64,000 nt of DNA, from positions 1,121,518 to 1,185,517 of the forward strand of contig JAAOMT010000664.1 of the NCBI GenBank assembly GCA_016748015.1, in the 5' to 3' direction. The notes under the pieces were generated by a model. The model saw nothing but the letters and a program-made list of their open reading frames with translations. It was not told the origin of the DNA and did not search any database. This DNA comes from Geosiphon pyriformis uo1 (Eukaryota > Fungi > Glomeromycota). Of the stretch, positions 33,870 to 63,997 are shown one piece after another (the stretch's first letter is position 1; each line of letters begins with the position of its first letter). A program made the position numbers and the translations under genes.

Positions 33870-36800
33870 GTGGCAACAAAAACCCCTAATCTTACTGTTC
33901 TTGAATTCTGCTGTGCTATTTACACACAAAATCAAAGTGATCTTGGATTACCAGAAGGGTGTTGTCCAGCAGAATCTGCCCTCACTTATTATATCAACGC
34001 CAGAATAAATTATCATATAGGAAAGGAAGAAGAACCACACGACGCAAAACTTGGATTATATAGAGAATTATCACAATACACTACAAAAGAAGTAGCAGTA
34101 ATAGCCGCAACTATTGTCAAAATCCATCGAGAAATTGAGCAATACGCCAACAAAAATTTTCCAATATCCACAGGAAACACTAGGGAACGCACCAACAAAA
34201 CCAAAGAAAATTTAGAAACTAATCAGGAAAGTAACCAGCAAAAACTAGAAACACCAGCTCAAATACCAAAAAAAACTGTCACTCAATCAATAAAGAAACA
34301 ACATATTTATTCACCAGAAGATAAATCATACCATTTTTCACCAGAAAATAAGATACAAATTCCATTANNNNNNNNNNNNNNNNNNNNGATTCAATCGAAT
34401 TCGCCGTCAGATTGAAGCGATTGAACAAGGATACTACACTGATCCTCAGGTTTTAAATCAGTTTATTAGAGGATTAAAAAGCAGCATTTTAGGAAGAGTA
34501 TGCCCTGCCCACCCTAATTCCTTACCAGAAGCCGTTACGCTCGCCAGAGCCCTTGAATTGGCTGAGAAAGAAGCTAACCATAGTCAAATGGTTAACATGG
34601 TAATGGAGGAAAATAAGACAGAAACATTAGAGAAAAGAGTAATGCGATTAGGGGAGGAACTCTCTAAGAAAATAGAAAGTTATCTCATCCCGGATCCGAG
34701 AAAAAATACATACCAACCACTCCAAAAACGCAGCCAGGAAGTCAGCGACAGTCGAAATAATCGCTCGTCACGCCAGGAATTCAGAACAGAAACACACGCC
34801 TGCCATTTTTGCAAATGCGTAGAACATTTGATTAGTCAATGTCGAACGCGAATGATGCAAGAAGCACGTGAAAATAATTACTACGCGCCACCCCAAATGC
34901 CCAGAAACCAGTACATGCCAATACCACGCCAATATCCCACCACATATCAAAATCAAGGAGCTTACCAGCAACAGCCCATGATAGCCAACCCGAATTGGCG
35001 TCCCGAGGCCCGAAATCAGCCCATGTGGAACCAGAACGCGTTGGTCCAGAGGAATCCAAACCGCGCCAGAACCAATCAGCAAACCAATTCAAACTACCAA
35101 AATTATCAACAAACTTACCTTAATATACCAGAAAACCTGATCATCGGAAACAATGACGGTAGAAACATAAACAGAACCAAGAATTTCTCCAAATTGAGCC
35201 AGACAATACCACCAGCAGTTGCCACCGAAGATAGCAGCCTCGCAGCTATTTTTCCTTTTGAATTAGAGGAAAACGAGGCTATGTTCAGTGGAGCAGCATT
35301 GGACGAAAAACGCCCAATCACTGCTATGTATACAGAAGCCACTGTAAACAATACCCTAATCAAACTTATCTTAGACAGCGGATCCGCTGGAAGCATCGTA
35401 ACGCTTCAATTAGTAAACCAACTGGGTTTCAAAGTTGATCGTGCTGCGACGTCCCAAATCATAACAGCCGATGGAAGTACAAAGCTGCCTTATGGCAAAA
35501 TCGACTCATTTCCTTTCGAAATTAATGGCATAGTAATACCTACAAAAGTATTAGTAATGGACGCTACACAATATCAAGTGTTAGTAGGGAATGACTGGCT
35601 AACAAAAGCCAACGCCACCCTAGACTGGACCACCCAAGAGCTTCTGATCAATTATAATGGCCACCAGGCCAAAATTCCAGCCACCTGTGGCCACTTCCAA
35701 AAACCCAGTGCCAACCAAAGACCTATCTTCGAATTTGAGGAAAATCCAGCACTACCAGCCATCAAAACCTATCAGCTCTCTTGGGCTGATGACCAAAGAA
35801 CAGGACTACCAGCCGTACCAACGTGGACTAGTGAAGAAAGATCCGAATGGAACCAGGTAAGTTCATGAAGAAACCACCAGCGACGCAGACCAAAGCTAGA
35901 ATGCTCGGTTTGTAAGAAGAAACTCTTGTCTATGACTGTGTGCAGCGCACCAGACGAAGACCCAAGAAACCCCACCCACTACTATTGTAACTGTTGTAAC
36001 AAAGAAAAATACGGTTACCCAAAAAGACACGGAAAATGGGACGAGAAACCGTGCCTCGCTTGTGGAGAACCGTTACCAAGAGGGTGCGACTGGAACGACT
36101 TACCAGGCAGAGAAGAAACGTGTGACGCAACTTGCCAATACACGATCCTCATCTGTGACTGGGTAAGAGGAGGAATGCCATTCGAAGCAGCGTTCAACAG
36201 AGCGTTAAAAAGACTACAGCACTACCCACACGACGAGAACGAGTTGTACAACACCGCACAAGCCAAAGTAAGAGGAGGAACCGCCGAAGAAATACGACGT
36301 TGGAAAGAGTCAGCCGAAGTAGCCGACAAAGTCGCTAGCTACAACATGTTCGACCCAGTGGACGAATTCCAGGACTACTACCAACAACTATGCCCTATTC
36401 GACAAGAGCAAGAACAATACCTCGCCCAAATCAACACTTACCTCTGCGAAAACTGTCTCATCCCGTGCCAAAGTCAGTGCTGTGAAGAGTGTCAAGACGA
36501 AAGGGACTTAGAAAGAAAAATGGAAATTGAGAATCAGCAGTCTCAAAATCAATCAATAAATCAATAAGACTCACCTGACGGTCCCGAGTCAGAAAAATTT
36601 GTAGTCTATACTAACCTAGAACAGGTGACCAACATCCGATACTTCGACAACGGGCACTTAGGAATAATACCCGAAAGAGCCCATCTAACCAACGCCGAAT
36701 TCAATCTACATTATCCGGAAGACCAATCCACAACGTTACCACCCAGGAGCATCACCAAAATCGACCTAAAATTAGCGGTTGAAATTCCGCCAGGAATAAT

Positions 36801-38890
36801 GGTTCAAATGGCGTCACAATCAAGCCTCGCGAAAAAAGGAATAAGCGTTCAAGGAGAAGTAATTGACTCCGGATACACTGGAAATTTGATGGTTTTGCTA
36901 CAGAACAATTCAGAAAAGCCTTATACCATTGAATCTAAGGAAAAGATTGCACAAGCAATTTTCCTACCATTGGTAAAAATTGGGAAATTCGTGCCAGTGG
37001 AAAATCGTGAGGAATTGTCACAAACAACGAGAGGAACTTTTGGTTTTGGATCGACAGGAAAAGGAATTGAAGTGAATTTCACTGAAACAATAGAGAAAAA
37101 AGGTGAAGTAATTAAAAATGAGCGGTCCATCACGCTCCTACCATATGGAAAATCAGAAATAAGAATAAAAAGGACAATTAAAGAAAAAGACCTAATATTT
37201 GAGCCCTACCCAGAAACTTGCCAACAGTTTCTCATAGGACTTACTAACTTTTTTATTCCAGCTGATAAAGCTCAATGGATAAAAATTCCTATTGCAAACA
37301 CCACAGAAGAACCCGTCTACATTCCGGAAGATACCATCATTGGATACCTCGGAACGAAGCTAAAAAACGCGTCAACACCACAAGAAATTCTAAATTTCCC
37401 AGAAATCGCCCTCTACTGTGAACTCAATTCAATAAATTGGCAATAACCAGTAGAATGCTATCAATTTACGCCAGAAGAATTGGCCAAATTAAACATTGGA
37501 ACAATGGATCCCGACCAACAGCGACAATTAAAAGCATTAATTTTAAAATACTCTGATATATTTTCAAGAAATGGCGAATTTGGAAGAACCAACTTGGTTT
37601 AACACCAAATCCCCACTGGAGACACCAGACCTGAAAAACAACGCGCTTACTATGTTCCACCAATGGAGCATAATTTTATCAGAGAAGAAGTTCAAAGCAT
37701 GTTGAAAAAAGGAATAATACAACCATCAATGAGCCCATGGTCCTCACCAGTTGTTTTAGTAAGGAAAAAAAACGGAAAAATTAGATTTTGCGTCGACTAT
37801 CACAAACTAAACAGCAAAACAACCAAAGACTCATACCCAATACCATTAATTGACAAAATCTTCGACGTTTTTGGAGGAACAAAATGGTTTTCTACACTGG
37901 ACTTGACCAGTGAGTACTGGCAAGTGGAAATGGACCCAAAAAACAGACATAAAACAGCATCCACAACACAAAATGGCAATTATGAGTTCAATGTAATGCC
38001 ATTTGGATTAACAAATGCTCCCGCGACATTCCAAAGACTAATGGACGTAATTTACTCCGGAATCTTGTGGCAATCCATTGTTGTCTACTTGGATGATACA
38101 AATGTTTTCTCGTCAAAATTCACAGATCATCTCCAACATTTACAACAAGTTTTTGAGAGATTGAGACATGCTGGACTTAAACTAAATCTAGAAAAATGTT
38201 TCTTTGGGAAAAATGAGCTAGTATTTTTAGGACACGTAGTTGGAAAAGATGGAATAAAACCAGATCCATCAAAAATAGACAGTGAAAAATTTTCCAGTAC
38301 CTCGAAACGTTTCAGAAGTTAGAAGCTTTTTAGGACTCGCATCTTACTACCGCCGCTTTGTAGAAAACTTTTCAAACATCGCCAAACCCCTTAATTACCT
38401 ACTATCTAAAAATGTGAAGTTTGAATGGACTGAAGCACAACAAAAAGCTTTTGAGTACCTTAGACAAAAGCTCATTGAATCACCAATAATGATCTATCCG
38501 AATTTCAACAAGAAATTCATTTTGGCCACAGATGCCTCTGAAACTGGACTTGGAGCCATTCTGTCACAAAAAGATGATAATGGAAGAGAACGTGTAATCG
38601 CTTATGCCAGCAGAAGTCTCAGTACAGCAGAACAAAACTATGCAGCACATGAACTTGAATGCTTAGCAGTAGTCTGGAGTTGTGTTCACTTTGACACATA
38701 TTTACGGTACCAACCCTTTGAGATTACGACAGATCATAGAGGTCTGGTCTGGTTAAATAACAAGAAAGCACTAAAAGGAAAATACGCCAGATGGTCACAA
38801 ACGTTAGCACCATACAATTATATTATCAAATACAAAGAAGGTACCAAAAATGCTAATGCCGACTGTTTGTCAAGAATGAGACACACATAA
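33870..38890 (+). pseudogene. Gypsy D gag-pol, a single reading frame with few lesions (Gag, protease, Cys-rich domain, dUTPase, RT, RNase H)
   Basis: ORFs 34558, 35926, 36625 and 37663 share one frame; LILDSGSAGS, GEVIDSGYTG/RGTFGFGSTG, YLDD, LATDAS...NANADCLSR; one frameshift near 38282. Confidence 0.93.
36665..37065 (+). pseudogene. dUTPase domain in Gypsy D pol
   Basis: IDLKLAVEIPPG, SSLAKKGI, VIDSGYTGNL, EKIAQAIFLP, RGTFGFGSTG. Confidence 0.93.
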
Positions 38891-42694: not shown

Positions 42695-45600
42695 CTACAC
42701 ACCTATATGCACAGAGACTGTGTCTTCAATACCCGAAAAGAACAAACAAAGCTTGCGAAACCTGAAATTAACCCCAAAAGCTTCAGCAATACCCAACAGC
42801 CTAATCACACCAGTCGAAAATACCATAGGCAAACCAGAAATTGACACAGGAATGGACCCATCTTATGAGATCAAACCACACCTCTCCATAAATGCCCAGT
42901 GTTTGGTGTGGACCAACCAGATGTCATCCCTAAATACAAGACAAAACTCACGCACAAAGCCCACAATCCTTTTAGTACCTTCCTTAGAATCTTTAAAAAC
43001 TAAGACAGACTCCCGAAACCAGTTATCAAAAGCAAAGCTCTTATACAGAGCAACACCAACTCCAACCTCAGAAATACAAGAAGCCAGCACCTGTAAAACA
43101 CATGAAAAAGAGTGAGATAGACCAGAAAGAGCCTTCCAAGCTGAAGCATGAGTGTCTAACAAAGGAGCATGGTCTGCAGCATCCTAAGAACATGAAAAGA
43201 CATGATCTGAGATCTCAACATTACTACAGAACAAACAGACCACACTAGGGTATCTTCTATCATATAAACGCTTGCACACAGCAACAGGAAGCTGATGATG
43301 GAGAGCCTTCATAAAGTAAGTGCGACAGCTTGCCATGCACATGCTGATGAAACTGGAGGCCAAGTGAGAATTGGTGTGCCATACCATAAAAGACTTAAAC
43401 CAATTGACATTAGCATGCAAACTATCAGCCACAACACAAAAACCAACTCCAACCTCCCAACGAGCATGATGAACTGATCAGAAAATATTGTGAACAAAGT
43501 GTTTAGAGTTACCAAAAACTGCCGTACCACCAGCACACAAAAAATATTCACTAACTAAATGAGGCAGACACCAAGCAGAAAGAGTAGTACTTTTGGCAAA
43601 TGCATCAACATGCTCATTGCTTGAGACACCTGAATAACATTTCACCTTAATCCAATTTACATCCAAATTCTTTTGACGAATAATGGTAGCAATGTGGCGA
43701 TGCTCGATCCAACAGCAGTTCCTGAAATCCAGATGAACCAGCAAAGACTCTGACCTACATGCATCCAAAGCAGCTTGGCTATCTGAAAACAAGTCAATTG
43801 AATGAGAAGAAGGAACACACTCAAGAGCCAAAGCTATGGCTTGCAGCTTCATTAGAGTAGAAGAAACCAAACCAGACACCTCCACCCCCAAACCCAAGTT
43901 AATGTCCTCAAAATAAACAGCAGCACCTGCTTTCACATCAACAGTGCCCAGACCAGACAGAGACCCATCCATATACACAGAAAGGTGGGCAGCATTAGCA
44001 GTCAGCAGAGTGTTACAAACCATACCAAAATCATGAGAGAGACAAATATCTGATACAGCATGACCATCCATCAAAGAAGAACCTGAGGAGAGGGGACCAA
44101 CACCACCAAAAAAGTAAACAAAGAGATCAAACCAGAAAGGGATTGGGCCACAAAGGTCTAGCCTTTTCCAACACTTAAAGGCTTTCCAATTAAAAACATC
44201 ACCATTATGGTCATGAAGCTGTTCTACAAAAGCAATTCCATAACGTCTAAATAAAAAAACACACCTGAAAAAACAGGGTTCACCAAGGACCAAAGACATA
44301 AGAATACTACACCAACAGCAAAAAGCACAAGCCAGAGAGCCACCCAAAGACAAATCACATCTGGAAAAAATGCAAACCACACCAGCCAAAAAATTGTTTG
44401 AGGGGTTGACACCAATATGAAATGAAAACAACAAAGGATGACATGGGTGCCAGCTAAAAACTTAAAGATCATAAGACCTATAAGAAAACAGGTGACCCAA
44501 AATGCCAGCAGAATTTGTGAAAGTAACAGCGGATACCAATTTACTCTCAGCCTGAATCTGTTCAAAAGTCTTTAAACCATACAATGAGGGGTGGTGCAGT
44601 GCATTATTGGAGAAATTATGAGGCAGTCCAAACTTAGATTTCAAGATCATGTATACCAAAGCATCCCATTTGTTACAAACACCCACAGAAACAAAACTGA
44701 ACTGAGTCCTATAGCTGATGATAGGAAAAAGAACCGCGAACACCAAATACACATACTGCTTATTAGAAACTGCCTTTCTTAAAACTAAATTCACAAAAAA
44801 CCACACATCTGCCTGGGCTTTAGTTAAGCTGGACTTCGAAAGACCCTCAGAAGATAAAAAAATGCCCAGATAACAATGAGATTCCCCTTTCTTGGCAATA
44901 GAAATAGGCACACCACTGATAGTTAAATGAGGGTCCAACACCCGGCAATTGATGAAGATGGCCACCATTTTGTCATTATTTACAAAAATATTGTTAAATT
45001 TGAAAAACTCACTAGCAATATCAAGGATATATTGTGTAGCAGCCTGGCTGCTACCAACCCAAATAGTATCATCAACAAAAGTGCTGGCAGCAAAAAATGA
45101 AGACAGCCCAGCTTGAGAATTCACCTGGCCAGTTTTGGATATAAAATGAGAATTCAACCTGTAGCCATACACACTATTTAGTCTTTTGACTTCACACAAG
45201 AGTGAATCATAAAATATATACCAGAGAAGAAGAGAGAAAACTTCCCTTTGGTCCAGTCTGTCATAAACACAATACCCATCAGTTAGGCCAAAGTCAGTCA
45301 TCACTCTGTTAACACGACCATTGTGAATGCTGCCAAAAAATCTAATAAACTTCTCACACATCTTAATTCTGACCAGACTTCTCCTGAGAGGTTCCCAACT
45401 AACTGAGTTATAAGCCTTACGCATGTCTTGTAAAACCAACCAGAGTTCTCGGTTTTTTTTCAGGGCATCTTCAATCACTGAACCAACAGCAAAAATGGGA
45501 GACTGAGTTGTTGTACTTTTTAAAACTGAAAAATTGTTTCTGCAAAGAACATCAAAAGTGCTACAAGCCGAAAAAATCCTATCCAAGAGGATCTTGGAAA

Positions 45601-47383
45601 GAATTTTGCGAGCCATTTCAATCAAAGCAATAGGGTGAGTGTTTGTGAGAACTCTCTCCTATTCATATGGTTTAGGGATCATAGAAACCCAAGCTTCTTT
45701 CTAAGGTCCAGGAACTGATTCACTAGCTAAACACAAGTTCAAGAGCACCAAAAGCATATCCAAAACTGATCTGTCACAACACTTCCACAATTTATTAGAG
45801 ATATCAGAGAGACCAGCCGCCTTCCCATCAGGAAAATTTTTAATGACTGCCAACATTTTATCAAAACTAATCGGACACATGACACTAGAAAAAGCATCAT
45901 CAAAAACATACTCTAGAGGCCAATATTGGTGAGCCCAATTTTTGGAGATATTAGAAACCACTCTACGTTTCCTGGTTCACCTCTCCATAATTTCGTCCAC
46001 CTTCGATTTGACAGAATCAGGCTCCAAAATCAACTCATCTTCCATAACCAGATGATCCAAGACCATCTTGCAAAAAGGACACTCCAAAACACCCCTAATG
46101 GTGTGACCCTTGTCTAGTTCAAAACTTTCCATCCTCTTACTAATAGCCTGTTTGATCGAAGAATCCTCAGCATGTTTGGATTCCAACAACTTAGAAACAT
46201 GGTACAACTTCCTCACTTTGGCCAGTACAAAATGAATAAGATCAAAACCAGAACCTAAAAGAAACAGAGACCTCACCACCAATGCACTAGAAGAATCAAG
46301 CCTGTGCCACACCTCCAACAAAGCAGCAAACTCTTTACCAGAAACTGAATGTAAAGCCTTAACCAACTTTGAAACCAGCAATTCTAGCCTATAGAACCTA
46401 GAAGACACCTTGGTGAAAATGCCATCAAAATTTTTAAACCACTTCCTTTTAAAAGTACCATCCACAGAAAGAATCATGATCTTGCAAACAATATCTCACA
46501 TAGCATTCATATCAGAAAATTTCACAGCAGCACCAAACGCACCTAAAAACATAGAGGCATTAGCAGCCGAAGTGTTCTTGAACTCCAACCACTTAGCTCC
46601 ATTGGCATTCTTGATGTCAAATTTCCAATAATCCCTGGTGGCCTGTTTGTGCAACAAAGAAAGCTGCACATCCAACAATCCACCTATACTCACAGACACA
46701 GAAACAGCCCTATGATCAGTATCAAAAAAGTCATCAACACCAGCCACACTACGATCCACAACCACATTAATTAAATTAGAAGAGACAAAAACATAGTCAA
46801 TTGTTTTGACAACACCACAAAAATTGCACCAAGTCAGAGACTTCACAAACGAACTCTCACTCAAAGAGTTGACTAGACCCAAATCGAAACACTTTTTGAA
46901 ACTGGCACATTTGTGAAAACCATCCTCATTGAAATCACCACCAAGAATGACAAAGGAAGATTCATTCACCGCTTTAGCAATGAAAGAGTTAATATCACCA
47001 GCTTGAGAGAAATGAACCACTGAGAAAGTGCCAGCATACAGCCCCAGAATCAATACAGAAAGCTTGTTCTTAAAAAGCAGCCTTACCAACAAAAGCCAAC
47101 CAGACACCTCCAAGACCTTGCACACATGTCTTGCCAAAGAAGAGTTCAAAATAATAGCAACACCAGATTCCATGTGACAAGAATTCAGACCAGAAGTAAA
47201 AACATAAACACTATTAAACCTATCAGCAATCCAAGAGTAAACCTTTCTCTGCAACTTTGTTTCAGTGACAATAGAGACCAGATTGTTCATATCCTTATGC
47301 CAATAAACAATGTCTGCCTGCTTTGCACAATTGTTCATACCTCTGACATTGCATGTTGCAATTTTCCAAATTAAATGAGTCAT
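42695..47383 (-). pseudogene. LINE copy 2 ORF2 (APE endonuclease, RT, RNase H, zinc finger)
   Basis: IATCNVRG, GGDFNE, DTDH; LQDMRKAY, FVDD; VYMDGS, DSQAAL, WIKVK; CLFC...HVFSC. Confidence 0.93.
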
Positions 47384-49326
47384 TGAGAAACTGTGGGAGC
47401 TGACAAACCCAAACCAGAGCACAGAAAATTCAATTTATCTAAAACTGAACCAACTGAAGCCTCCAAAGTGACCAATTTTGTCTTCAAACTGCCCACCTTG
47501 GTAGTAAGAACCTTGGAACTACTAGCACTGAGATCAACAACAGCATCATCAGTAATAGGGGAGGTAACATCAGAAAAACCCAAAGCATTGTCCACAATTA
47601 TATTTGAATTCACCCCAGAACCCAAAGCTGCAGAAGCAACAGGAGAGGAGGCCAGAAAAGAAGAAACTGCAGGAACCATACCAAAGGAATCCAACCTAAC
47701 CAGGATGCCAGAAACACGGTTAGCCAAAAGCTCCAAAGAGCACTCCAAAACTGCCAAATGATCATCCAAATGGGAAACAACAAGAGGATCAGAGACAGCT
47801 AAAGGAGGAACCAGACCAGAATGCAAACCAGAACCAGAAGAACCAGAAGGAAATGCACAAGAGGGGGTGCCACTAGCAACTTGAGCCCATGTCTTGCCAC
47901 CAAACAAAACCAGACAGACAATAGGAGCCGATTTTTTCTTATATATACCAGCCAAATGAACCCGATCATGATCAGAAACCACTCTCTTCTTATGAATACC
48001 AGAACTTTCATCCACAGAACAGTTGACAGTGATATGACCAAATTGTTCACATTTGGTACAACTAGCCAAAACAAGACTAGCCCAATGCAAACTAACACCC
48101 TTGAAAATTGGAATGATATAAACAGCAGCCAATCTGGCAGCTTCATTTTTAAAACTAATAATTGCACACCAATCATGAACATATGAACTAGGATTGCGGC
48201 CAATGAAACAAGTCTTCCCACCATATGATATCAACAAATCAGACAAATCATAAGCAGAAGTACTCACAGACAAAGTATAAAGCATAGCCCGATGTCAATC
48301 CCTAGATACCCACATTTGTTTATCACAAACAGCCAGTGCTACGCAAACTGAATTCTTTCCCACAAGAACAGACCACTTAGAAGCGACCAAACTGGTAACT
48401 TCTGATGACTCAAATTCAATCTGGGCCTTTTGTCAAAGACCAATCAATTGCATCCTGATGGAAACAATCTTGCCAAATTTAGAAAAAACTGATTCCACAG
48501 TCACTTTTGGAAGATCTACTGGGATTTCCTTAATGACCACTTCCCAATTTAAACGAATGTTTGTTTTTTTGAAATTACTATTAACAACAATTTTCTCACG
48601 GACTGCTATTTCCCTGGCCTTAATCAAACTAGACTCATTTGTGAAAGTTGAACAAATAACACCAAGAAATTTTGAGAGAGTTGAAGCTCCTTCAAAACCA
48701 TCAATTTTGTAAAAAATCTTTTTGATTGAAATGAGCTTATTATTATTAGTTCTGTCAGGAACAGCTGACAAATTCACATCCAAAGCAAACGATTTCACTG
48801 GCCTGAAACTACGACTCTCGAGAACACATAATTTAGAAGAAGGCAGCTGATTGGATTCATTGACTTTAGAAAATGACAACACGGAATTGTCGTTGTCTTT
48901 GTTCATAGTAGCAAATAGAAACGCCTTAAGAGGTTGTTCCAATACATACATCCGAGTGTGAGTTCTATGCAGTGTAGTCTCGTCCATTTTGTCATCCCCA
49001 TCTGAATCAATGTAGCTTGTCTCCTTGGCAACTAAGTTCTCCAAATTCTCAACATCTAAAAGACCACTTACACTGCCAGAAATGCTACCCACTCTGCTTC
49101 CCCAGGACACTGCCGGCTTACCATTATTACCACCCAAGTTTTTTAAACATAGAAGACCAGCAGACAACTCAACTGAAATGCCAGCTGTAGGCTTTTTAGG
49201 CTTTTTGTAGAATACACCACGGGCGTAGACCATATCAACATGCTTGTTTTTAGCACTCTGGCGGGTCCCCAAACCAGCCAAACCTGAACCAGAACCACCA
49301 GCAGACAAGCCCACCAGTTCCATCAC
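47380..49326 (-). pseudogene. LINE copy 2 ORF1 (RRM-like repeats, CCHC knuckle, C-terminal coiled coil)
   Basis: EVVIKEIPVDL...FSKFGKIVSI RRM-like segment; CTKCEQFGHITVNC; TGA stop overlaps the ORF2 ATG. Confidence 0.9.
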
Positions 49327-51900: not shown

Positions 51901-52229
51901 AAAAAAATACAATAATATTATCAAAACCAATTTTAAATTAATACTTTTATTTTAAATTAAATTTTTTAAAATTTAAAAGTTTTTATTTTTTAAAAATATT
52001 TAAACTATTATTTTTATTTTTTTTGTTAAAAATTGTTTTATATAATATATATTTAAGTTTTTAATATATATATATATTAAAATATTTGGTTTTATTTGGT
52101 ATTTTTATATTAAAATATTAATTTTAAACTTAAAAAGCATATTAATAATAATTATTTTTATTTTAACTTGAAATTTTTTTTAATTTATATTAATTAAATA
52201 ATAATTTTTAAATTGTTTTTTATTTTTAT

Positions 52230-55200
52230 AAAATTAATTAACAGATTTTTGAAAAAAATAAATATTTAAAAATTTTAAATTACTTTTTTTTTAATTTTAT
52301 AATAATTAGAACAAAAAGTAAAAAAGTTTTAAATATTACTTTTTTTATAGTAACTAATAAAATTTTAACAAAAAAAAGTTTTTTTGTTATTAAAGCAATT
52401 AAATAAAATATTTTAATAATATTTAAAAAAAATATTAATTATAATAAACTGTTTTTAACAGTATTACAGTTCAAAAATTTAGCAAAAAAAATATAAATTA
52501 TCTAATCATAATATAACATAGTAATAATCTTAAAAAAATAACAATTAATATAATAACAAGTACTAGCTTATAATAGTGATCAATACCAACTGATAATAAT
52601 AACAAACACCAGATTAAAATATCAAAAAAATATTACAATGTGTTTTTTTGTAAAACTACAAATATATATATATATAGTAATTTTAATATTAAAAAAAATA
52701 ACAAGTTATCAAACAATTTATTTAACAATTTTACTTTAATTATCTTTTTAGTCTTTATTTTTAAAATAAATATCCACAAAGATTTTTAAATAAAAACAAA
52801 TCAAAAAGAATATTAAAAATTAAATTATTATAACTTAAAGTATTAAGAAATTTACTTATATTATTTATTAAATAAAACTATTATTTATTAGCTAAATCTC
52901 TTGAAAAAATAATTTTTAATCAAAATTATTTATATTTTTATTAATTCATAAAAGCTTTATTATAAAAATTAAAAAAAAGACTAAAGACTATTAATATTTT
53001 ATGTTTTTAAATTAAAAAAACACATTAGACAATTACAAAAATAGTCTTAAAAAGAATCTTAAATAGTAAGTAGATTTTACTTTAGTTTCTAAAAAAAGTG
53101 TATAAACATATACAACAATTAAAATTGAGAAATAATTTACATTACAACATCAAAAAAAAGCTTTTAGTATAAATATTAATATTATTACACAAATAGAAAT
53201 AAGAAATTCACAAAAGATTAATTGTAATTAAAACAAAATATTTGCAATTAAAATAACAAAAAAAACCATTTTATAATAATAATTTTTAAAGTATTTTTTT
53301 TACTTTTGGCTAATGGTTTTTTTTTAATAAAAATTTTTTTTAAGAAATATATTTAAATTAATTTTAATGTTATTTCTACTCTTTCTAAGAATCTTAAAAT
53401 TTTAATAATAAATTAATTAACAAACTAATTTTTTGTTTTTATTACTATTACTACTATTTTATAAATAACTAAAAAAACCAAAAACTCAAAAAAACAGCAA
53501 TAGTTACTTATATTTATTATTGTTATATTAAATTTTTTTGTGGTTTTAAATAAAATCTTAAAAAAAATCTTTTTAATAGCAACTAATTTTCTTTTTAATA
53601 TAAACAGCAACAATAATAACACATTTTTCAAGATAAATTAAGATTAATTATTAATTGTGTTGTCAAATATGATGTTTTTTAGCAAATTATTATTAGTTTT
53701 AAAAACAAAGCAACTTATTAAGTTATTTGATTTTAAAAATTGAATTAATTAAATAAAAATTAAATCAACATTTTTTTTTTGTTTTCTAATACTGTTTTTA
53801 GTAATATCTGAAAAATAATTTTCAGTTATTAAAGATTTTTTAGATAAGTGGTTTTTATTCTAATATTTATATTATTTTTAAAATCAAATTAACTTTTATT
53901 AATTTTTTGTTTTATTTGTTATTTGGTTTTATTAAATTTAAATCTGTTTTAAAAGATAATATTAAGCTATTTTGTATAGATTTTGCTTTTAAAGCTTTTT
54001 TGATTACTATTCTTAAAATTTTTATTAATGAATTTATTTTAATTACACTTAAAATTACAAAATATTCAATAGTAGCTTTTGGTTTTTTTTTTATCTTTGT
54101 TGTATTTCATAATATTTTGCTTGACATATCTTTTAATAATATTAAAAATGTTTTTAATATTTTAATATTATTATTTTAATAAAATTAAAGTTTGTTGACT
54201 TGTGACAATATATTATTATTAATTTTAAAAACTTTTTTTTTGCTGTTACTGCTTTTAATAACTGGTTTGTATTAGTTAAAAAAGATAATATTAGAATTTT
54301 TATTTTATTTAATTAAAGAAAAATTATTACTTTAAAAGATATTTTTAAGATCAAATTAGTTAATTTTTTTTTAGTTGCATTGTTTTTGAAATTAGTAATT
54401 TGATTTTTTAAGTTAATAATTATATTTGCTTTTTTTTTTGCTCTTTTGATTCTTATTATTGTTAATATTTTGTTATTATTATATTTAATTTTTATAAATT
54501 TTTGAATTTTATTTTTGTTAAAATTAATACTTTGTACAATATTATATCTGATAGAAAATCTTTAAGTATTATTGTTGCTATAATTATTAAAGTTTGAATT
54601 ATTTATTTACTAATTATAAAGTATTATTATCTCTTCTTTTTAAGTTATTTATTAAGTTTATTGTTAATTTTAAGTCTTTTATTTTGGTTTTTGTTGGTAA
54701 AAAATTCTATATTAAGACTTTTATTTCTTTGGTTTTTTTTTGGTTATTTCTGTAACTGTTTTTGTTGTTGATTTTGTAATTAAATTAAGATTGAATTTTT
54801 TAAAATTTCAGATTTTAGATTTGGCTTTTTAATTAAGTTTGTTGTTATACTAATTAATATTTTGATAATATTAATTACTATTTTTTTAAATGCTTTTTTT
54901 GTTTTTGGTAATATTATAGATTAGTTTTTTATAAATATAATATTAGTTAAAACTAAATATAATTTTAATATTAATTTTATAGAAAAATGTAATATTAATC
55001 TACTTAATAATAATTTTTATACTAAGTTAATTATTTTTTAAGAATATTAATCTAATTTTATCAAATTTGATATTAATACAATTATTGTATAATTAAGTAG
55101 TTTTGTTAAAAATAATAATATACTAATTAGTATTATAAGTAAGATATTTTTTTAAAATAAATTTTTTTTTATAATAATATTTTAATTAGCTTAAATAATT

Positions 55201-55310
55201 GATTATATATAGAAAGTACATGATTTATATATAGTTTAAATTACTTAATTTAATATATTGTATTAGATTGTGTTTGAGTCTTACTTATTAAATAAATAAA
55301 TAAAAAAAGT
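52230..55310 (+). mobile_element. Eroded ORF1-only LINE derivative, copy 2, interrupted by a solo LTR
   Basis: Colinear with 49640-51900; 55181-55290 matches the reverse complement of the LINE copy 2 3' UTR (42582-42690); A-rich tail. Confidence 0.7.
52462..53278 (+). repeat. Old solo LTR of family D
   Basis: Start tattacagttcaaaaatttagcaaaaa and end aaaaccattttataata match the D LTR ends with transitions; TSD acag/ataa. Confidence 0.82.
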
Positions 55311-56767
55311 TTGAATTTTATTTTAATATATATAAATAATAAACTTTTATTTAAAAATTTATCCAATAAATTTTTTGTATTTATAAATGGTATTATTATA
55401 ATTATTTTATTTTTTATTTATATTTATATAAATATTTTAATAATATAAAAAAACAAATAATAAATAATCTTTTTTGAAAAATTTTTAAACAAATTTATTT
55501 TGAATTTTTTTTATTATTCTGTTTTAAAATTTACATTTTTTATTAATAAAATAAAATTAAATATAATATTTAATAATAAATTACAAAATTATATATATAT
55601 TATTTATTTAATATTGTTTTTTTGAATGTTATATTATCAAAAAACAAATATTATATTAGTTTTTTATATTTGGTTTATTTAATTTGTTAAAAACATAATT
55701 TAAATATTAATAAAATTTACTTAATTTAATTATATTAATAATTTAATTATATTTTTTATTTTAGCATTTTTTATTTTTTAATTAATAAAAATAGCAATAG
55801 TTTTTATTATTAATAGTAATATTATTGATAAAAAAAACCAATTAATTAAGTTTAAAATATTTTATATAATAATATAACTATTATTTATTAAATAATATTA
55901 TGTATAAAAATATATATATTATTATTTATGTTTTAATATTAATTATTTAATTATTATTTAACAAACTTTTATTTTATTAATAATTTATATAATTTACAAA
56001 TATAATTAAATTATATATAAGAATTTAAAATTAAGAATATATAAATATTTTTAAACTTTTAACTTAAATTAAAACTTTTTTTAAAAAAGCAAACAAATTA
56101 AGTTACCAAAAAAGTTACAATGTATAATTACAATAAAAATTACAATAGATATTTAATTATTTTTTAATACTTAAAACATTTTTAATAACAATATATGTAT
56201 ATATATTGTATTTATAACAAAGTTTTCAATTTAATTAATATTTACAAATTAAAACTTGATTAATTATTTTTAATAAATTTTATAAAAAACTATTAAAATT
56301 TATATTTAAATCTAAATTAATTGTAATTATTAAATATATTAATATTAATATAAAAGCTTTTATTTTTATTTTTCAGTTAAATATTAACATATTAAATTAA
56401 GAAATTAACAATTAGCAGAAAACAAATCATTTGTAATTTGAAAAAATAAAATAAAACTTTACAATAAAAATATTTTCAATTCATGTAATAAAAGCAAACT
56501 TTTCATTCAGACATCAATTGGTTCCAATTTTATATCAATTCAAAACTTCCAGATTCCTAAGTCAGATTTATTTCATGTAGCTTTTCTACATAGGACGAGA
56601 TTTTCGTCGAACAAAGATAGTCTTGGAAAATTATATGAATCGTATTTTTAACAAATATCGAATCATTCCAGTAATCCGAGAGCACAAAAATGAAAGATAC
56701 CGTTGTTGGAATTTATGCAAATTTTAAGAAATTAGGATCCGTTCTTTCGTGGATTCAATCTATAGCT

Positions 56768-59700
56768 TCATCGAAGTTTCATAAATATGAGGTAACAAGC
56801 CTATTTTCGCAAAACAAAATTCAAATTTAGTATTAATTGACTTTTAAATAGATAATCGAATATATAAAAAAACCTACGTGAACAATTGGTAAATGATCTA
56901 CATTTCCTCCATCGGCTATAGCTTTTTCATCGACGTATTCTTCATATGAACAGATTTTTCTTTTATCTTTAGCGTGTCCTTCGGGAACAGTGATAACTAG
57001 CTCCTTTAACGGCATCACATCTCCACCCACCGCACGATTAATATCTTCCATAAATATCATGCTCAAAGGCCATAGTTTACCTTCTGGGCTCCTAAAATCT
57101 TGGGCACCGACTATTAAGAAGCCAGAGGGAGGAAGATTATTGTGTGCTTCACGGGCTAAATGGGTAATTGCGGTTCGATAGGCTGGGATGTTTTCGACAT
57201 TAAGTGTTCCATTTGGAATATGGGGTACCACAATAAGTGCTGTAGGTGTAGGTGGAGGCAATGGTTTACTAGCAAGAAGTTTCTCAACATGTGAAATATC
57301 ATCCGATGATTCACTTAGATCAGAGATGAGACCCTAAGAGTAATTAATTCAGGAATTGGGCTTATTAAGAGAATATTCATGAAATAGGCAGAATAGAAAT
57401 AAAAAAAAACTTGCCAAAGAAAGAAGCATTTTCTGATTTTCTTGTATTCTTTTCTGCCTTATTTTCTCATACTCTGACAATCCATCCAATTCACTATCTA
57501 GTGTCTCTGAGTTAAAGCAATAAAAAAGAGATTATCTCAAGTGCATATATAAAGAATACTGAAGGTAATCACAACAAACCTTCATCTTCTTTTAATTTAA
57601 CATCCTGTTTATGATTGGTTTTCTAAAAGAAAAAACAGATTAAGAGCCGTGAGAAGAAATGATTTGATGAAAAGAGTTGTTTAAATAAAATTTTTACCAA
57701 TAGAGCATTGAAATTTAATTTAATTTCTTCCCAATTGGCCAAGTCTCTACCAAAACGTTCAACCTGCACAAAATTCAAATGAGCGAATTATAGATGGTTA
57801 TTCATTGTTAAGTCGTTAATGTCGTACCATTCTTGATGTACATAACAGCACAAAATCATGACGTGGGGAAGGCTTAAAAGTCCAAGTAGTTCCCATGACA
57901 ACACTCTTTCGTGCAATGGGAACTGTGGGTATTTCACGCCAGGTGCGAGAAAAAGTCACATTTTCTTGAATGGTTGAATGATCTGAGGAAGAGAAATATT
58001 GTTGAGTAATAACAAGATTTGTCTATATCTTAGAAAAACGAAAATTTAAAATACCAGGTGTCAACATCATTGAGTCATTATTTCTCAAATCTACTTTTTT
58101 CAATGTGGCAATAAACTCATGCGTAAACATTAAAAAGTCGTATTGTACACATAAATACGTCCCTAAACCAAAGGCCTGGCAGTATCTTTGCCTTTTCACT
58201 ATCTGAACACAGAAAGGTTGACTTAGATTATTAAACTATTCCATCTTCAATATAAAACATAGCCTGGAGAATTACTTACTAGTTCCTCAAGTTCGAAACC
58301 ACGATCCATGTATTGACGAATCAACTGAAAGCTGACTGGAACATAGAAACATTGTTCGCGATTGTCACCAATCCCTAGTGTGACTCTCTTTCCAGGTTTT
58401 AGTAGCCTTTAGAGTTTATAAATGAAATGATTTTCGTTATTGATTGAGCAAAGGCTCAAAGGCTAAAAATATAATACCTCCAAGATTCATCAACCACTTT
58501 GGACATTTCCATATTAAATTCCGCCGAGTTTGCAAACCGCGATAAATCTCCGTCGATGTGGGTTGAATACTCAACACTGATTTAATAAAGAGGAGTAATA
58601 GGTCAAAAACGAGAAACAACGAACAGACCTATCTATTCTACTAACCAATTTTTATATGGGGGATGGCTCAAAATGTGATCAAAGGACTCATCTTCGAATA
58701 GCCTTCCACTCAGTTGCCGGGAATCAGCTTGTAAAATGATGGGCCGATGTTCAGCTGTGGTACCACGACCAGGTGGAATTGCGAAAGAACAATTACGTTG
58801 TGATAAAGCGACAGCTGCCTATATTCGGATGAAAATTTTACATTTTGCCTCTAATTAATTCACCCCATGCTATTATAAACATACCGGATTTATATCTACT
58901 CCAACGCCTCTGTTAAACAGTCCAAAGGATATATTATCAGATGAAAAATCGAAAGAATATAGCAAGCTAAATGAAGTTTACCTTCGAGAGAGCAAAAAAC
59001 ATTCAATCGCGTCGGTTCCTGATAATTATAAATTTAAGTTCTTTTATATCTACACCTACTACAGTTAACATGTGAGCTAACGAACCTCTGCCAAGAAAAT
59101 TGGAAAGAATCCTTTCATTCTTTTTGGTATAACGAAGTAATGCTCTAAAATAAAAAATTAATTTTCGTAATTAATATAGTAAATGATTCGAATTTTTCCT
59201 TTAAAAAATCATACCTGCGGACAGTTTGTGGTAACCATGTGCCATGATAATCCGTACCGCTATGAGTAGCCCCTTATTTCCAAGGTAAAGTTGAAATTAG
59301 CAAGTAGAAATAAATTTATCAAAAATAATTGCAACTAACATCGAGGTGCTCGCCCCGGAATATCAAAATATGAACTGTCAAATGGCAATGAAAATAATTG
59401 ATTCTCAGCAGGTTCATAGCTGTCTAAATAGAGCGCTTGGGATTGTGAATAGTCAAATTTCACACCAGAGACCGAAGTTCTTGTCAGATATGGTGTATGA
59501 GTATAATCCTCGATGGAAGCGACGTATTTTTCTTTTCCGAATTGCGACTCATCTGTAGGATTGTTTACAAGTGCAAGTTCAAAGCAGTCTTCACACATTA
59601 AAACACCATTGTAACCTGTCGAAAAGTAAAATTCCGCTTTTTGTTATTGATGTGAAAGGTATTTTAAGAAACCTAATCTTTGATCCGTAGCTAAAAAGGG

Positions 59701-62700
59701 AGTCGATTAGATACCTTTTCTCCATCGAGATGACTCTTCTGACCAACAGTAAGAACACTGAACTTGTGACCCATTTTCTCGCTTCTTGAATGTGCTTTTC
59801 GGTTTTCTTCGGGATGCTTGAAACGAGGAGTTGTTGAAAAAACATTATAACAGCAATTGCACTTCGTTAATATGATCTTAAGATATTTGATCATGCATAC
59901 CATTCTCAGATTTGGCCTTCTCTTTATTTAAAGTGATAGCGGCTCTTTTTGAAGATTCCTCTTCCTGAATTTTGCGTAAAGCTATAACATATACCAAAGG
60001 GATGAGATACTTAAGTTTTTTTTTGAAAAAGTGAATCATTGGGAAAATACGGACATGTTTCCCGAAACTCATCTTTAGAATGTTCATGTTCATCTGGAAA
60101 ACATTCTGGAAAGCACTTTGGATAGGATACAAATTGAAAGTCAATTAAATAGGTCAGTTCATCGTAATCCATGAATACAGCTGGATTTTTACCTTGGAAC
60201 ACAAATCAAAGGTAGTGAAGAATTTTTCAGCACAAGGAGAGCAGGACCACCATGCTTCTTCCTCCTGCAACTCAGCAGAACAAACATCACATCTAAAACA
60301 TTCATTATATTCTTCTGAAAAGAAGTTTGATATGAGATTCATGGTAATACTTAAAGATAAACGAGGAATATGAATTTAAGAAATAGCCGTACCTATTTTA
60401 TTGTGAATCGCCTCATGACTAGGACAATAGAAAATAACCCCAATTTCAAAATGGGAAAGAGGTTTACCAGTACATGCCAGATGGAAGCTGCGGTTACATT
60501 TAGGTTCAAAACAACCAATCGTTGCCCCCCGCTCTTTACATTTTCCACATTTCTTGAATGATTAATTGTATTTCAATTAGCCTTATACGTTTTTGATAAA
60601 TGGAATAATCAATAACCTACCATACTTCTGCCTCGTCTCCAAGCAATTGTCACATTGTACCATTCGTTATTTTTAGTTTGGACAACTTCTGGGGAATATT
60701 TCGCGCACGCATAATGGGCCCAGAATATTTTTTTTCTTTCACCGTGACGTGAAGCGGCAGACGAAGCAAAAGGGTGAGGCCCGATAAAGCCACCAAGACG
60801 TTCATTTTCATCGTCATTGCAAAACCCACAAATTTTTCGTGCGCTCCACGCTTTTAAATACAAATATCCCATATCACTTTCTGGAGGTACTAATTCATTC
60901 AATAATTTGCTGTTTTTATCCTTGAATGTTGTGTCAAATTCATCTTTCTCAAAGGTCGAAATAAGTTCGCCTTTAGAAGATAAATTGGGTACCCCATCAC
61001 CAAGAACAGATTGCACAGCGAATGAGCAACGTGGATGTTGATGATCTTCAGGAAAGTTATGAGCAAAACACCTTACAAAAAAATTAATGTATGAGAGCTA
61101 AGAAATTCATTTTTTTAAATAATAAATAACAAAATAGTGCATGTCGCAGACTTTACCAGATACATAACTCAAAACTCTTATAATCATTTCCTTCTGAAGG
61201 AGATTCACAATATGTACAATAATATCTAAGTTAATAAATAAGAGAAGTTAATCATTTTTGTACAGAAGGTTTTAGTTTGGGCAAAATTATATTTATGATT
61301 GAAAAATCATTGGAGTAATTGAGATCTACCTATATTGCTTGATAATAACGTTACATTGGTTACAATATATAAACCAATTGCCCCTGTCTATACAATTTTA
61401 AAAGGTAGAAATATTGATAAATATAATGATACTTGTGTCAAAATTCAAGTGTATGATTAAACTCGTAAATTTATACCTGAGTCATTTCCATAAACTTTAC
61501 CGTCTATAACGTATTCAATATTACTGGCGATTTCATCGAATTTAGAATTCTTCTTGGTTTTTTTTGTCCTATTAGCTGCGGATAACAAGGATTCTAATTC
61601 ATCACTTTCAGCACTGGTAGCACCCTCAACGTATCCACCCCGCAAGCGCTGACTATTCATGTCAATCCATTCATCGTAAACAGAGGAGGAATTGTCATAA
61701 TGGATCAAAACTCGATAGCCTTTAGCTTCCACGACTCTAGCTGAATGCCATTCTTTAAATGCATCACGTGCCTCTACTTTGGCTCCTGCTCTAAAACGAG
61801 CCTTCAACTCGTGTAGGTCTGTCGAAGTATCTTCATCAAACCGATTTTTGGATTTACCTTCACGTACAGCTTGACGAGAACTACGCCTGACATATAATTC
61901 TCGCCAATCAAAGGTACTGGAATACTCTAACGTAGATTGTCGACTCTTAGTATCCGAATCATCAGAAGAACCTTCGACTGGCTCATAATTTTGAAGACTG
62001 AATCTCGGTTTTGTTCTTGGGGGGTTTCTACCTTTATGATGCAAAGGTGATTTTATTTTTTCACGTAAAGCTTTACCTCGGCTTTTGGGAGCGATTATTA
62101 AATAGTCATCTTCAACCATTTCAGAATCGCTTGAATCGGTTTGATATTGAGGCTCTTCAATATCTAGCTGCGCGCCTCTTTGAGAATCTAATATTTCTTC
62201 CAAAGTCATTTCACGCAATCTAGAACTTTCGGCTGGTATCCATTCATCAAATTTAGCGTCCCATCCATCATAGTGAACACGAATCCTGCTGTTTTGAATA
62301 TCCATCATCATTCCAGTATACCAATTCCCATCAAGGCACAAGACTTTGACTCGTTTATAAAGTTCAAAGCCGTATTGGCCACCTCTTCGAGACCGGCTTC
62401 CTAAATCATCTCCGAAAAGGCTTCGACAATAAGAGCAGAGTTCAAGGCTTCCCACTCGTTGAACATTCAAGTGCAATACATTGCAAGATTCACAAACTTT
62501 CTGAACAAGTTTCGGGTGCTTTTTTGAAAAATATAAGGATTCATCATCCTCTATATTTGAAGTTTTTCTCCTAACTTTAAGAACTCCTTTATTACGGCGT
62601 TGAGGCTCAGTTTCACTAAGGCTTGTTGATTGCTTACTAATACTGAGAGTATCAAATTGAATATTCTCTACACTATTGGATAAAGAATTGTTGATATTGT

Positions 62701-63997
62701 GTTTATTGGAACTGCTGGATTTTTTGCTAATTTGTTTTCTTTTTGATTTGCCTTTGTCAACCTCTTTATTAGCCTCTTTATCCATCCCAACATCATAGAC
62801 TTCAGCATTTGTTTCTAGCTGACTCCTAGAATTTTCCTGATTATTATACATTTTCTGAATATTATTGTCATGAATAGACATTCTTAACCTCTGGCTATCG
62901 ACCCGTAACCATTCATCATATTCTTGCCCCCATCCATCATAATGAACTTTCACTTTAGTTTTCTCAACTTTGACAATTTTCCCAGGGTACCACAACTTGT
63001 CAAAACTAAGAACTTCAACCTTATGGTTTAATTCATAGCTGTGAGACATTGATTTAACTCTGGTCAATTCGGGGGCAAAGAGAGGTATACATTTAGGGCA
63101 TAACTGAAATGCACCTATTTTTTCAATATTTTCGTGAGCCTTATTGCAAGATTCGCAATTCTTCGTAGTGGGGACCCTTTGTTGTTCGTTTGACTTTTTT
63201 CGAATACTTAAGGTGTTTACCGCAAGTTGTGAGTTTTTTATCTGGTTATTTCTCGGATTTGAGGATTCTTTCTTTTTAATTTGCGAAGCCTTTTCGACAA
63301 CTTCGATCCCTCTGTCTAAATTTGACGTTGAATCTGTATTTTCAGAAGCTGAAGAATCCAAGTCTGAAAGTGAAGTTAAATCACTACCGTCACTATCCAT
63401 AAAATCGAAAACTGAGGATGAAATTATTTTTGAAGTAATAATCTCTGGCTGATCAGGCTTCTTTATTTCTGGCTTTAAGGAGATTTCTAATATATCCAAC
63501 TCTGGAGGCGTTTGTGGTTTTTCATCAAGTTCTTTTGGCTTGAAATTCTCGCTAAGGCCAAGTTTAAAAACCTTTCCACTATCCTCCTTAGAAATAAATA
63601 GGGTGCTCTTTGAACATTTAAGATTATCAATGGGATATGATTCATTATGATTGCCCTCTATATCACCTATTTGCTGACTTCCTTCATCTGAACATACAGC
63701 CTTAATCCTATCATCTTCGATGCCCATTGATATGTTAATTTTCCTCAATTTAAATTCTCCCGCCTCAAATGAATCTTCGACTGAAATTTGACTTATTTCC
63801 ACTTTGTCATCTTCTCCAGAGACAGAAGTTTCATCATGCAAAAAATGAAAAGATGGACGGATATTTATATTTTGTTGTATACTAGTCGAGGGATTTGTTA
63901 CAATATCCTCAACACTCGGTGTTTTCATAAGGACATCCAAAGGCTTGCTTGGAAGATCTGGATAATCAGGAGCAAAATTTTGTTGAGGATTTTCCAA
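56768..63997 (-). CDS. Multi-exon (~24 exons) chromatin-reader-fused amino-(N4C/N6A) DNA methyltransferase: 3x Tudor/chromo-barrel, 2x C4 finger, ZZ, extended PHD, ZZ, GATA finger, MTase, degenerate MTase-like domain; 5' end probably outside the window
   Basis: Hand-spliced exons stay in frame where checked (59615-59340, 59272-59215, 59144-59086, 59018-58982, 58909-58885, 58818-58646, 58576-58478, 58406-58280, 58202-58055, 57333-56878, 56800-56768) and give RWATHSGTDYHGTWLPQ, ILSNFLGRGTD, GVDINP, ADSR, FDHILSHPPY, RLLKPG, IGD, FTHEF. Normal CpG content and no disabling stops seen. Some upstream exon boundaries are approximate. Confidence 0.88.
58055..59350 (-). other. Amino-methyltransferase catalytic domain (Rossmann fold; motif I before motif IV)
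   Basis: SAM-binding NFLGRGT (59105-59013 across an intron), acidic motif II GVDIN, catalytic SHPPY at ~58654-58668. Confidence 0.88.
59584..59760 (-). other. GATA-type zinc finger (C-x2-C-x17-C-x2-C) split by an intron
   Basis: Spliced sequence CSYCWSEESSRWRKG|YNGVLMCEDC. Confidence 0.8.
60055..61388 (-). other. ZZ finger, extended PHD (zf-HC5HC2H-like), second ZZ finger
   Basis: CNQC...YYCTYC...FELCIWCF...HQH; CGFC...WAHYACAKYSPEV...CGKCKERGATIGC...CNRSFHLAC...FYCPSH; CDVC...WSCSPC...FDLC..CF...HEH. Confidence 0.85.
61640..63160 (-). other. Three Tudor-knot/chromo-barrel (Royal family) domains, the first two each preceded by a C4 finger
   Basis: Repeats of the type V...W(Y/H).(G/A).(I/V).....V.(V/I)HYD.W...(Y/F)DEW....S.RLR at ~62885-63025, ~62215-62355 and ~61640-61785; CESC...CPKC and CESC...CSYC. 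Confidence 0.88.

What the first reader, a model, noticed from the sequence alone, without database searches (positions are those of the whole stretch)
56768..63997. Domesticated prokaryotic-type amino-DNA methyltransferase fused to a large chromatin-reader array: candidate 4mC/6mA epigenetic writer
Seen: the ORF track shows only fragments, but splicing ~24 exons gives one intact protein. Its MTase domain reads PRWATHSGTDYHGTWLPQTVRRALLRYT..ERILSNFLGRGTD..GVDINP..ADSR..FDHILSHPPY..YS..DLS..RLLKPG..IGD..GFELEELIVKRQRYC..THEF. Established: F-x-G-x-G followed by an xPPY motif defines amino-methyltransferases, not C5 DNMTs or MT-A70, and the WATH/HPPY pattern resembles bacterial and archaeal restriction-modification-type methylases. 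Tudor/chromo-barrel, ZZ and PHD domains read histone tails, and GATA fingers bind DNA. Inference: this is a horizontally acquired, intron-populated enzyme that is guided by histone marks and writes 4mC or 6mA, analogous to the chromodomain-fused N4CMT of bdelloid rotifers. I recall similar architectures being predicted computationally in basal fungi, but I know of no biochemical characterisation.
Basis: partly seen in the sequence, partly recalled or inferred. Interest (0 to 1): 0.92.

Follow-up and report, generated by a model that had tools for sequence, protein, structure and literature searches.

The report
Known fungal chromatin-guided DNA methylase family
This is an intact fungal gene for a bacteria-derived DNA methylase carrying chromatin-binding modules; the family was predicted in 2016 but, as far as I could find, never tested, and its working-plus-dead enzyme pair appears to have come ready-made from bacteria.

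Summary
The gene is real. My 24-exon minus-strand model has no internal stop and matches the public NCBI model exactly (P0001, 2246 aa; the 5' end lies outside the window). An intronless Coemansia ortholog carries readers and methylase in one ORF. The host looks like an arbuscular mycorrhizal fungus. The architecture is not new: it is the basal-fungal group-1 Clade 4 N6A-methylase of Iyer, Zhang and Aravind 2016. HPPY is invariant in 62 eukaryotic sequences. I found no knockout or assay; MetB and N4CMT are other families. Two things are added here. (1) The active-plus-dead pair exists in bacteria, and the dead domains of fungi and bacteria group together (100/100; a fungal duplication is rejected, p-AU 0.021). 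(2) The bacterial kin sit in restriction-modification cassettes but are distant from the classic permuted DpnA-slot enzyme, which weakens the published ssDNA inference. Best reading: a low-abundance, chromatin-targeted DNA 6mA writer (0.6); 4mC and RNA remain open. Mucor lusitanicus has an ortholog that was not among the published deletions. RNA-seq could not be checked.

The parts
56768..63997 (-). In-window part of the gene: 24 exons, 1823 aa (= P0001 residues 424-2246); the gene begins about 1.5 kb past the window end
63080..63157 (-). Four-cysteine zinc finger before barrel 1 (approximate limits; possibly the 'DNMT3-like Zn finger' of the 2016 paper)
   Evidence: seen in translation; identity is inference
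62876..63037 (-). Chromo-barrel/Tudor repeat 1, with WY, HY-x-G-W and Y-D-E-W aromatic residues
62425..62494 (-). Second four-cysteine zinc finger (approximate limits)
   Evidence: seen in translation
62207..62344 (-). Chromo-barrel/Tudor repeat 2
61631..61789 (-). Chromo-barrel/Tudor repeat 3; lacks the G-W tryptophan of repeats 1-2
61029..61370 (-). ZZ-like zinc finger 1 (three exons); by cysteine pattern only
   Evidence: (no ZZ hit)
60415..60839 (-). Extended PHD finger (zf-HC5HC2H)
   Evidence: 39.7 bits against a cut-off of 29.1
60071..60309 (-). ZZ-like zinc finger 2
   Evidence: E 0.01, below cut-off
59575..59766 (-). GATA-type finger C-x2-C-x17-C-x2-C, split by an intron
58089..59361 (-). 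Methylase domain 1, unpermuted, predicted active (P0001 1717-1954)
59014..59104 (-). Motif I (SAM-binding F-x-G-x-G), split by intron 59019-59085
58654..58668 (-). Motif IV, S-H-P-P-Y
56771..57956 (-). Methylase domain 2, degenerate: no motif I and no xPPY; related to the second domain of bacterial tandem enzymes
57316..57495 (-). KRI helix inside domain 2, crossing the GC-AG intron
   Evidence: pattern in 18 of 20 orthologs
57334..57414 (-). GC-AG intron
   Evidence: agrees with P0001

Best explanation
A single-copy nuclear DNA amino-methyltransferase of an arbuscular-mycorrhizal-type fungus, most likely writing N6-methyladenine at few, chromatin-selected sites. Shown here: the gene, its domains, the invariant motifs, its spread across early-diverging fungi, and the bacterial origin of the two-domain core. 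Inferred: domain 1 binds SAM and holds the target base with HPPY; the dead domain 2 packs on it as a built-in partner, replacing the second subunit that dimeric methylases of this fold class use to grip DNA; barrels, ZZ, extended PHD and GATA finger, all added in fungi, bring it to chosen nucleosomes or DNA; the KRI helix recruits a protein partner. Whether it prefers single- or double-stranded DNA is open.
For: Best PADLOC match is a Type II R-M methylase profile over the full domain, E 1.2e-42. Fusobacterium homolog: 35% identical over 96% of the domain, HHalign probability 99.9, downstream of a D12 Dam and a DpnII nuclease. 46 of 48 related loci with full flanks hold both. Tandem bacterial kin: 43% identical in domain 1, TM 0.70 to the whole two-domain model; 7 of 17 are directly followed by a recognisable nuclease or by Dam plus a nuclease; 13 of 17 have an N-terminal C2H2-type finger before a helix-turn-helix-like segment. 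HPPY in 62 of 62 eukaryotic sequences; domain 1 is 57-87% identical across fungal phyla. His is an accepted first residue, and Ser marks N4C enzymes (PMC4738411). Single copy in this genome.
Against: No activity has been measured for this family in any paper I found. Most known fungal 6mA is already assigned: MetB accounts for 70-75% in Mucor and Mta1 for the symmetric sites (PMC11258239); robust 6mA tracks AMT1 (PMC12695648); Glomeromycota have under 0.3% 6mA. This genome also encodes MT-A70 and PF02384 candidates. Fold searches rank Trm11/TrmN and generic methylases first. Histone reading is untested.
Confidence: 0.6

Rival explanations
1. Sub-case of the best reading, as published in 2016: it methylates adenine only in single-stranded DNA (transcription or replication bubbles), like DpnA.
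For: Single-domain kin are the second methylase of DpnII-type operons, and no permuted methylase occurs in those 80 loci, so they fill the DpnA slot.
Against: The second methylase of the Lactococcus pSRQ700 DpnII-type operon (the DpnA counterpart, from my own knowledge) is permuted, with DPPY at 48 and motif I at 225, and scores 26 bits against the fungal profile versus 188-206 for HPPY enzymes. The fungal pair derives from the tandem family, which often appears to be the only methylase beside its nuclease and would then have to protect duplex DNA (inference).
Confidence: 0.2
2. It was repurposed to methylate RNA (m6A, m4C or m2G), for example nascent RNA on chromatin.
For: Best solved-structure matches include Trm11, TrmN and Trm14. 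NCBI names the bacterial kin 'TRM11 family'. Some tandem kin lie between archease and rtcB, or before rtcA. Shifts to RNA are common in this clade.
Against: The Trm11 match is weak (E 1.8e-5, about 20% identity, not above generic methylases) and no THUMP or other RNA-binding domain was found. None of 17 further tandem loci has rtcB, rtcA or archease within about 5 kb. A GATA finger is fused.
Confidence: 0.15
3. It writes N4-methylcytosine in DNA, like rotifer N4CMT.
For: PF01555 covers both chemistries; the first motif residue is not a strict predictor (own knowledge).
Against: No SPPY. N4CMT is permuted, beta-type and SPPY-dependent. Neighbours of the bacterial kin are DpnII, D12 Dam and DpnI-type modules, which belong to GATC 6mA systems. 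The 2026 fungal methylation review never mentions 4mC.
Confidence: 0.12
4. It is mainly a chromatin scaffold or reader with little or no catalysis.
For: His at the catalytic position is unusual; motif I reads SNFLGRG where bacterial kin have an acidic residue; bulk 6mA is explained by other enzymes.
Against: Domain 1 motifs are invariant across fungal phyla while domain 2 has lost them. All 120 bacterial kin checked also have HPPY.
Confidence: 0.1

Closest known systems
Group-1 Clade 4 N6A-MTases of basal fungi (Iyer, Zhang, Aravind 2016, PMC4738411)
   Same: Unpermuted active domain; chromo, ZZ, PHD, GATA and KRI fusions; second inactive domain with KRI inside; restricted to basal fungi; kin in DpnII systems.
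   Different: No AT-hook in this copy (present in several orthologs). The paper's text does not mention bacterial tandem forms; its figures and supplement were not readable. Its DpnA/ssDNA inference rests on operon position.
Bacterial HPPY methylases: single-domain in DpnII operons, and tandem forms (P0239 and kin)
   Same: WATH, F-x-G-x-G, HPPY, GDL and HE motifs in the same order; 35-43% identity; tandem forms share the dead second domain.
   Different: No chromatin readers or KRI; tandem forms have their own zinc finger and helix-turn-helix-like start, and a nuclease partner.
DpnA / second methylase of pSRQ700
   Same: Same fold class (PF01555); analogous operon slot of the bacterial kin.
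   Different: Circularly permuted, DPPY, only a motif-I stretch aligns (27% over 73 aa).
Rotifer N4CMT (PMC8885841)
   Same: Bacterial amino-methylase fused to a chromatin reader after horizontal transfer.
   Different: Permuted beta type, SPPY, single chromodomain, proven 4mC; independent acquisition.
Mucor MetB (PMC11258239)
   Same: Horizontally acquired bacterial-type 6mA methylase of early-diverging fungi.
   Different: PF02384 with an MmeI-like recognition domain; a different gene (a PF02384 locus lies elsewhere in this genome).
METTL3-METTL14 and Mta1-Mta9
   Same: Works-like parallel only: active plus dead methylase partners.
   Different: MT-A70 family, permuted, DPPW, separate chains.

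Membership tests
Group-1 Clade 4 fungal N6A-MTase | Unpermuted catalytic domain with [DNSH]PP[YFW] after strand 4 | tested here: met
   motif I at 43, HPPY at 119 of the domain; model
Group-1 Clade 4 fungal N6A-MTase | Chromo, ZZ, PHD and GATA fusions | tested here: met
   barrels and extended PHD over cut-off; ZZ and GATA by weak hits and pattern
Group-1 Clade 4 fungal N6A-MTase | Second C-terminal inactive methylase with KRI inserted | tested here: met
Group-1 Clade 4 fungal N6A-MTase | AT-hook and DNMT3-like zinc finger (listed among fusions, variable) | tested here: inconclusive
   no AT-hook pattern here, present in four orthologs; two four-Cys fingers seen but not classified
Group-1 Clade 4 fungal N6A-MTase | Found only in basal fungi | tested here: met
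   all named eukaryotic hits are Glomero-, Mortierello-, Mucoro-, Kickxello-, Zoopago-, Basidiobolo-, Entomophthoro- or Chytridiomycota; unnamed metagenome hits unassigned
Group-1 Clade 4 fungal N6A-MTase | Prokaryotic versions in DpnII systems | tested here: met
   46 of 48 full-flank loci
Group-1 Clade 4 fungal N6A-MTase | Identity with the accessions the authors listed | not testable with these tools
   supplement not held
DpnA-type permuted beta methylases | Motif IV before motif I; DPPY | tested here: not met
DpnA-type permuted beta methylases | Single-strand DNA specificity | not testable with these tools
   needs an assay
N4CMT / N4C methylases | SPPY motif, permuted order | tested here: not met
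   HPPY in 62 of 62; paper
MetB | PF02384 plus MmeI-like recognition domain | tested here: not met
   no such hit in P0001
Trm11/TrmN tRNA m2G methylases | THUMP domain and close sequence match | tested here: not met
   no THUMP hit; TIGR01177 15 bits against a cut-off of 317
MT-A70 or C5 DNMT | DPPW permuted core, or C5 catalytic motifs | tested here: not met
   no PF05063 or PF00145 hit in P0001; those families map elsewhere in the genome

The most novel reading that the evidence does not exclude
It is a third, overlooked fungal DNA-marking system, and either writes 4mC (which would be the first in fungi to my knowledge) or a locus-specific 6mA set by histone marks, through a fused active-dead enzyme pair taken whole from a bacterial restriction cassette, with the KRI helix recruiting a remodeler.
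Probability: 0.2. Interest if true: 0.8.

Novelty: new member of a known kind. Interest (0 to 1): 0.5.

Why it matters
Early-diverging fungi are the main eukaryotic home of DNA 6mA. Two writers are known (Mta1 complex, MetB), yet 25-30% of the 6mA signal remains in Mucor metB mutants. This strongly conserved third candidate was not among the 2024 deletions and does not surface in my term searches of the 2026 review. It has the richest set of chromatin-binding modules, so it is the obvious candidate link from histone marks to a DNA mark. Mucor lusitanicus has an ortholog (MUCCIDRAFT_114945), which makes the question directly testable. The bacterial tandem ancestor gives a 500-aa proxy for biochemistry and suggests that active-dead pairing predates the move into fungi.

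Tried and rejected
It did not call the region human-like. Single small exons found no prokaryotic kin, nor did the fungal profile in genome contigs. RNA-repair link: suggested by five or six contigs from two close groups, absent from 17 further tandem loci; read as cassettes inserted into rtc operons. MetB identity: rejected. Domain-1 tree: cannot choose between tandem and DpnII-linked kin as sister group (p-AU 0.395 and 0.219). Fold searches did not discriminate substrates. Multi-repeat hits to exon 23 are probably chance; P0049 shows FG-GAP-like repeats, and the others were not identified. A viral search found nothing. Paper searches for HPPY, for DpnA with fungi, for Cthe_1513, and for PF01555 with early-diverging fungi found no characterisation. 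The RNA-repair review I recalled is not held. A resemblance of the KRI helix to the HELLS-binding helix of CDCA7 is from memory; the paper read gave no sequence to test it.
Full report
Observation. The region holds a minus-strand gene. Splicing 23 short introns (64-104 nt, 22 GT-AG and one GC-AG) gives 24 exons and 1823 codons without a stop, ending at 56768. A search with exon 23 alone returned a public NCBI protein, P0001, of 2246 aa. My model equals its residues 424-2246 exactly. The start lies about 1.5 kb beyond the window. The genome is 128 Mb in 792 contigs. The nearest named proteins are from Funneliformis, Gigaspora and Entrophospora, and the query pairs with Funneliformis at 98/91, so the host is probably a Glomeromycota fungus.

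Handling of the spliced model. My own joined model was never sent to a search tool. It was translated in a script and compared locally with P0001. Searches went exon by exon by reference, then by the stored id P0001.

One transcript. The Coemansia aciculifera ortholog is a single 5217-base ORF with barrel, extended-PHD and methylase hits. A second intronless ortholog joins the extended PHD to both methylase domains. The 'separate transcripts' refutation therefore fails.

Anatomy. The protein has three chromo-barrel/Tudor repeats, two four-cysteine fingers, two ZZ-like fingers, an extended PHD, a GATA-type finger, methylase domain 1, and a degenerate methylase domain 2 with a KRI helix. Barrels, PHD and N6_N4_Mtase pass Pfam cut-offs; GATA and ZZ do not. 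Domain 1 is unpermuted, 57-87% identical across fungal phyla, with HPPY in all 62 eukaryotic sequences that cover it. Domain 2 lacks both catalytic motifs in all 20 aligned fungi. The gene is single copy. The finding did not mention domain 2.

Already described. [quoted passage not shown] Every core feature I could test is met; the AT-hook is absent from this copy. I found no experimental work on the family. The Mucor deletions covered metA, metB, metC, mta1 and p1; MetB is a PF02384 enzyme. The 2026 review's figure of 6mA writers shows Mta1, Mta9 and MetB. Orthologs exist in Mucor lusitanicus, Phycomyces, Rhizopus, Mortierella, Kickxellales, Basidiobolus, Neoconidiobolus and chytrids.

Bacterial kin, single domain. 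A Fusobacterium protein aligns over the whole of domain 1 at 35%. It follows a D12 Dam, a DpnII nuclease and an Mrr-like gene. Among 48 related metagenome loci with full flanks, 46 carry both Dam and DpnII; these loci are close relatives of one another, so they are not independent. None of the 80 has a permuted methylase. The HPPY enzyme thus fills the DpnA slot, but it is not close to the classic occupant: the second methylase of the pSRQ700 operon is permuted, has DPPY, and scores 26 bits against 188-206. That this protein is the DpnA counterpart is my own knowledge. The single-strand inference is therefore positional.

Bacterial kin, tandem. The two-domain model matches about 500-aa bacterial clusters over its whole length, TM 0.70. 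Such proteins were retrieved. The fungal domain-2 profile scores their second domains at a median 38 bits, against at most 15 for any first or single domain. The reverse test gives fungal domain 2 a median 54 and fungal domain 1 a median 5, though single-domain bacterial enzymes score 49. Both second domains have lost the WATH loop and motif I, and the insert after motif IV. In a tree of C-terminal halves all second domains form one side of a branch at 100/100, and a clade of fungal domains 1 and 2 is rejected at p-AU 0.021. Caveats: 122 columns and long branches. The domain-1 tree leaves fungi, tandem and DpnII-linked groups unresolved. On balance the active-dead pair came from a bacterial tandem gene, and KRI and the readers were added in fungi. 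I did not see this in the text of the 2016 paper.

What the tandem enzymes sit beside. The first contexts were RNA-repair operons, which raised an RNA substrate. In 17 further full-length tandem loci none had rtcB, rtcA or archease within about 5 kb, though some contigs were short. Directly downstream were PDDEXK_11 nucleases (5), a DpnII-family nuclease (1), Dam plus a Type II nuclease (1), or members of unnamed families. This is the pattern of a mobile restriction-modification cassette and favours DNA. Fold searches give only generic Rossmann methylases, with Trm11 and TrmN tied among many. The best profile match is a Type II R-M methylase, E 1.2e-42.

Mechanism. Most likely domain 1 methylates adenine N6 in DNA, domain 2 serves as a fused partner for DNA binding, and the N-terminal array restricts it to chosen chromatin. 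Catalysis, base, strand preference and histone reading are all inferred. Extended PHD fingers and chromo barrels can bind nucleic acid rather than histone tails (own knowledge). The mark is probably scarce: known writers explain most fungal 6mA, Glomeromycota have under 0.3%, and this genome has MT-A70, PF02384 and C5 methylase loci too. 4mC is less likely because Ser is absent and the neighbours are GATC 6mA systems; N4CMT is permuted with SPPY.

Verdict. A real, intact new member of a family predicted ten years ago and, as far as I could find, still untested, with two modest refinements: tandem bacterial ancestry and no close tie to DpnA. Interest 0.5 rather than 0.92, carried by testability in Mucor. 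The scan's own index held nothing on this gene.

Noticed in passing
window 33870-38890 (+), also 13239-13862 and 28998-29588: Ty3/gypsy-type retroelement pieces with a dUTPase between protease and reverse transcriptase; frames are broken into several ORFs.
   Followed up: no
window 43478-49326 (-), and 21396-21959 (-): LINE-like pieces: endonuclease and reverse transcriptase in separate fragments.
   Followed up: no
window 52000-56400: Very AT-rich stretch (GC 0.11-0.12) just downstream of the gene, possibly decayed repeats.
   Followed up: no
L161, L164, L176, L178, L181, L189 (downstream of HPPY methylases): A recurring family of up to about 185 aa; the members scanned had no Pfam or PADLOC hit. 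It sits in the slot elsewhere taken by restriction nucleases. A second unnamed family of up to about 450 aa occurs in L165, L179, L180. Candidate unknown nucleases.
   Followed up: partly
L091:1-3941, L098, L099, L092:439-4388, L095: Tandem methylase cassettes lying between archease and rtcB, before rtcB, or before rtcA.
   Followed up: partly
L005:5926-6660 and P0105-P0224: Several of these bacterial enzymes are named 'TRM11 family' by NCBI although their close kin sit in DpnII operons; probably a misleading name.
   Followed up: partly
L005 (NZ_CP084075.1): Filed as a plasmid but 2.1 Mb and carrying a DNA polymerase III alpha-like ORF; probably the chromosome.
   Followed up: no
L100:6001-8736 (P0244): Intronless, long-branch 911-aa ortholog in a gene-dense eukaryotic contig of unknown identity; may extend the family's range.
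   Followed up: no
window 57316-57495: The KRI helix recalls the HELLS/DDM1-binding helix of CDCA7 (from memory; not tested).
   Followed up: partly
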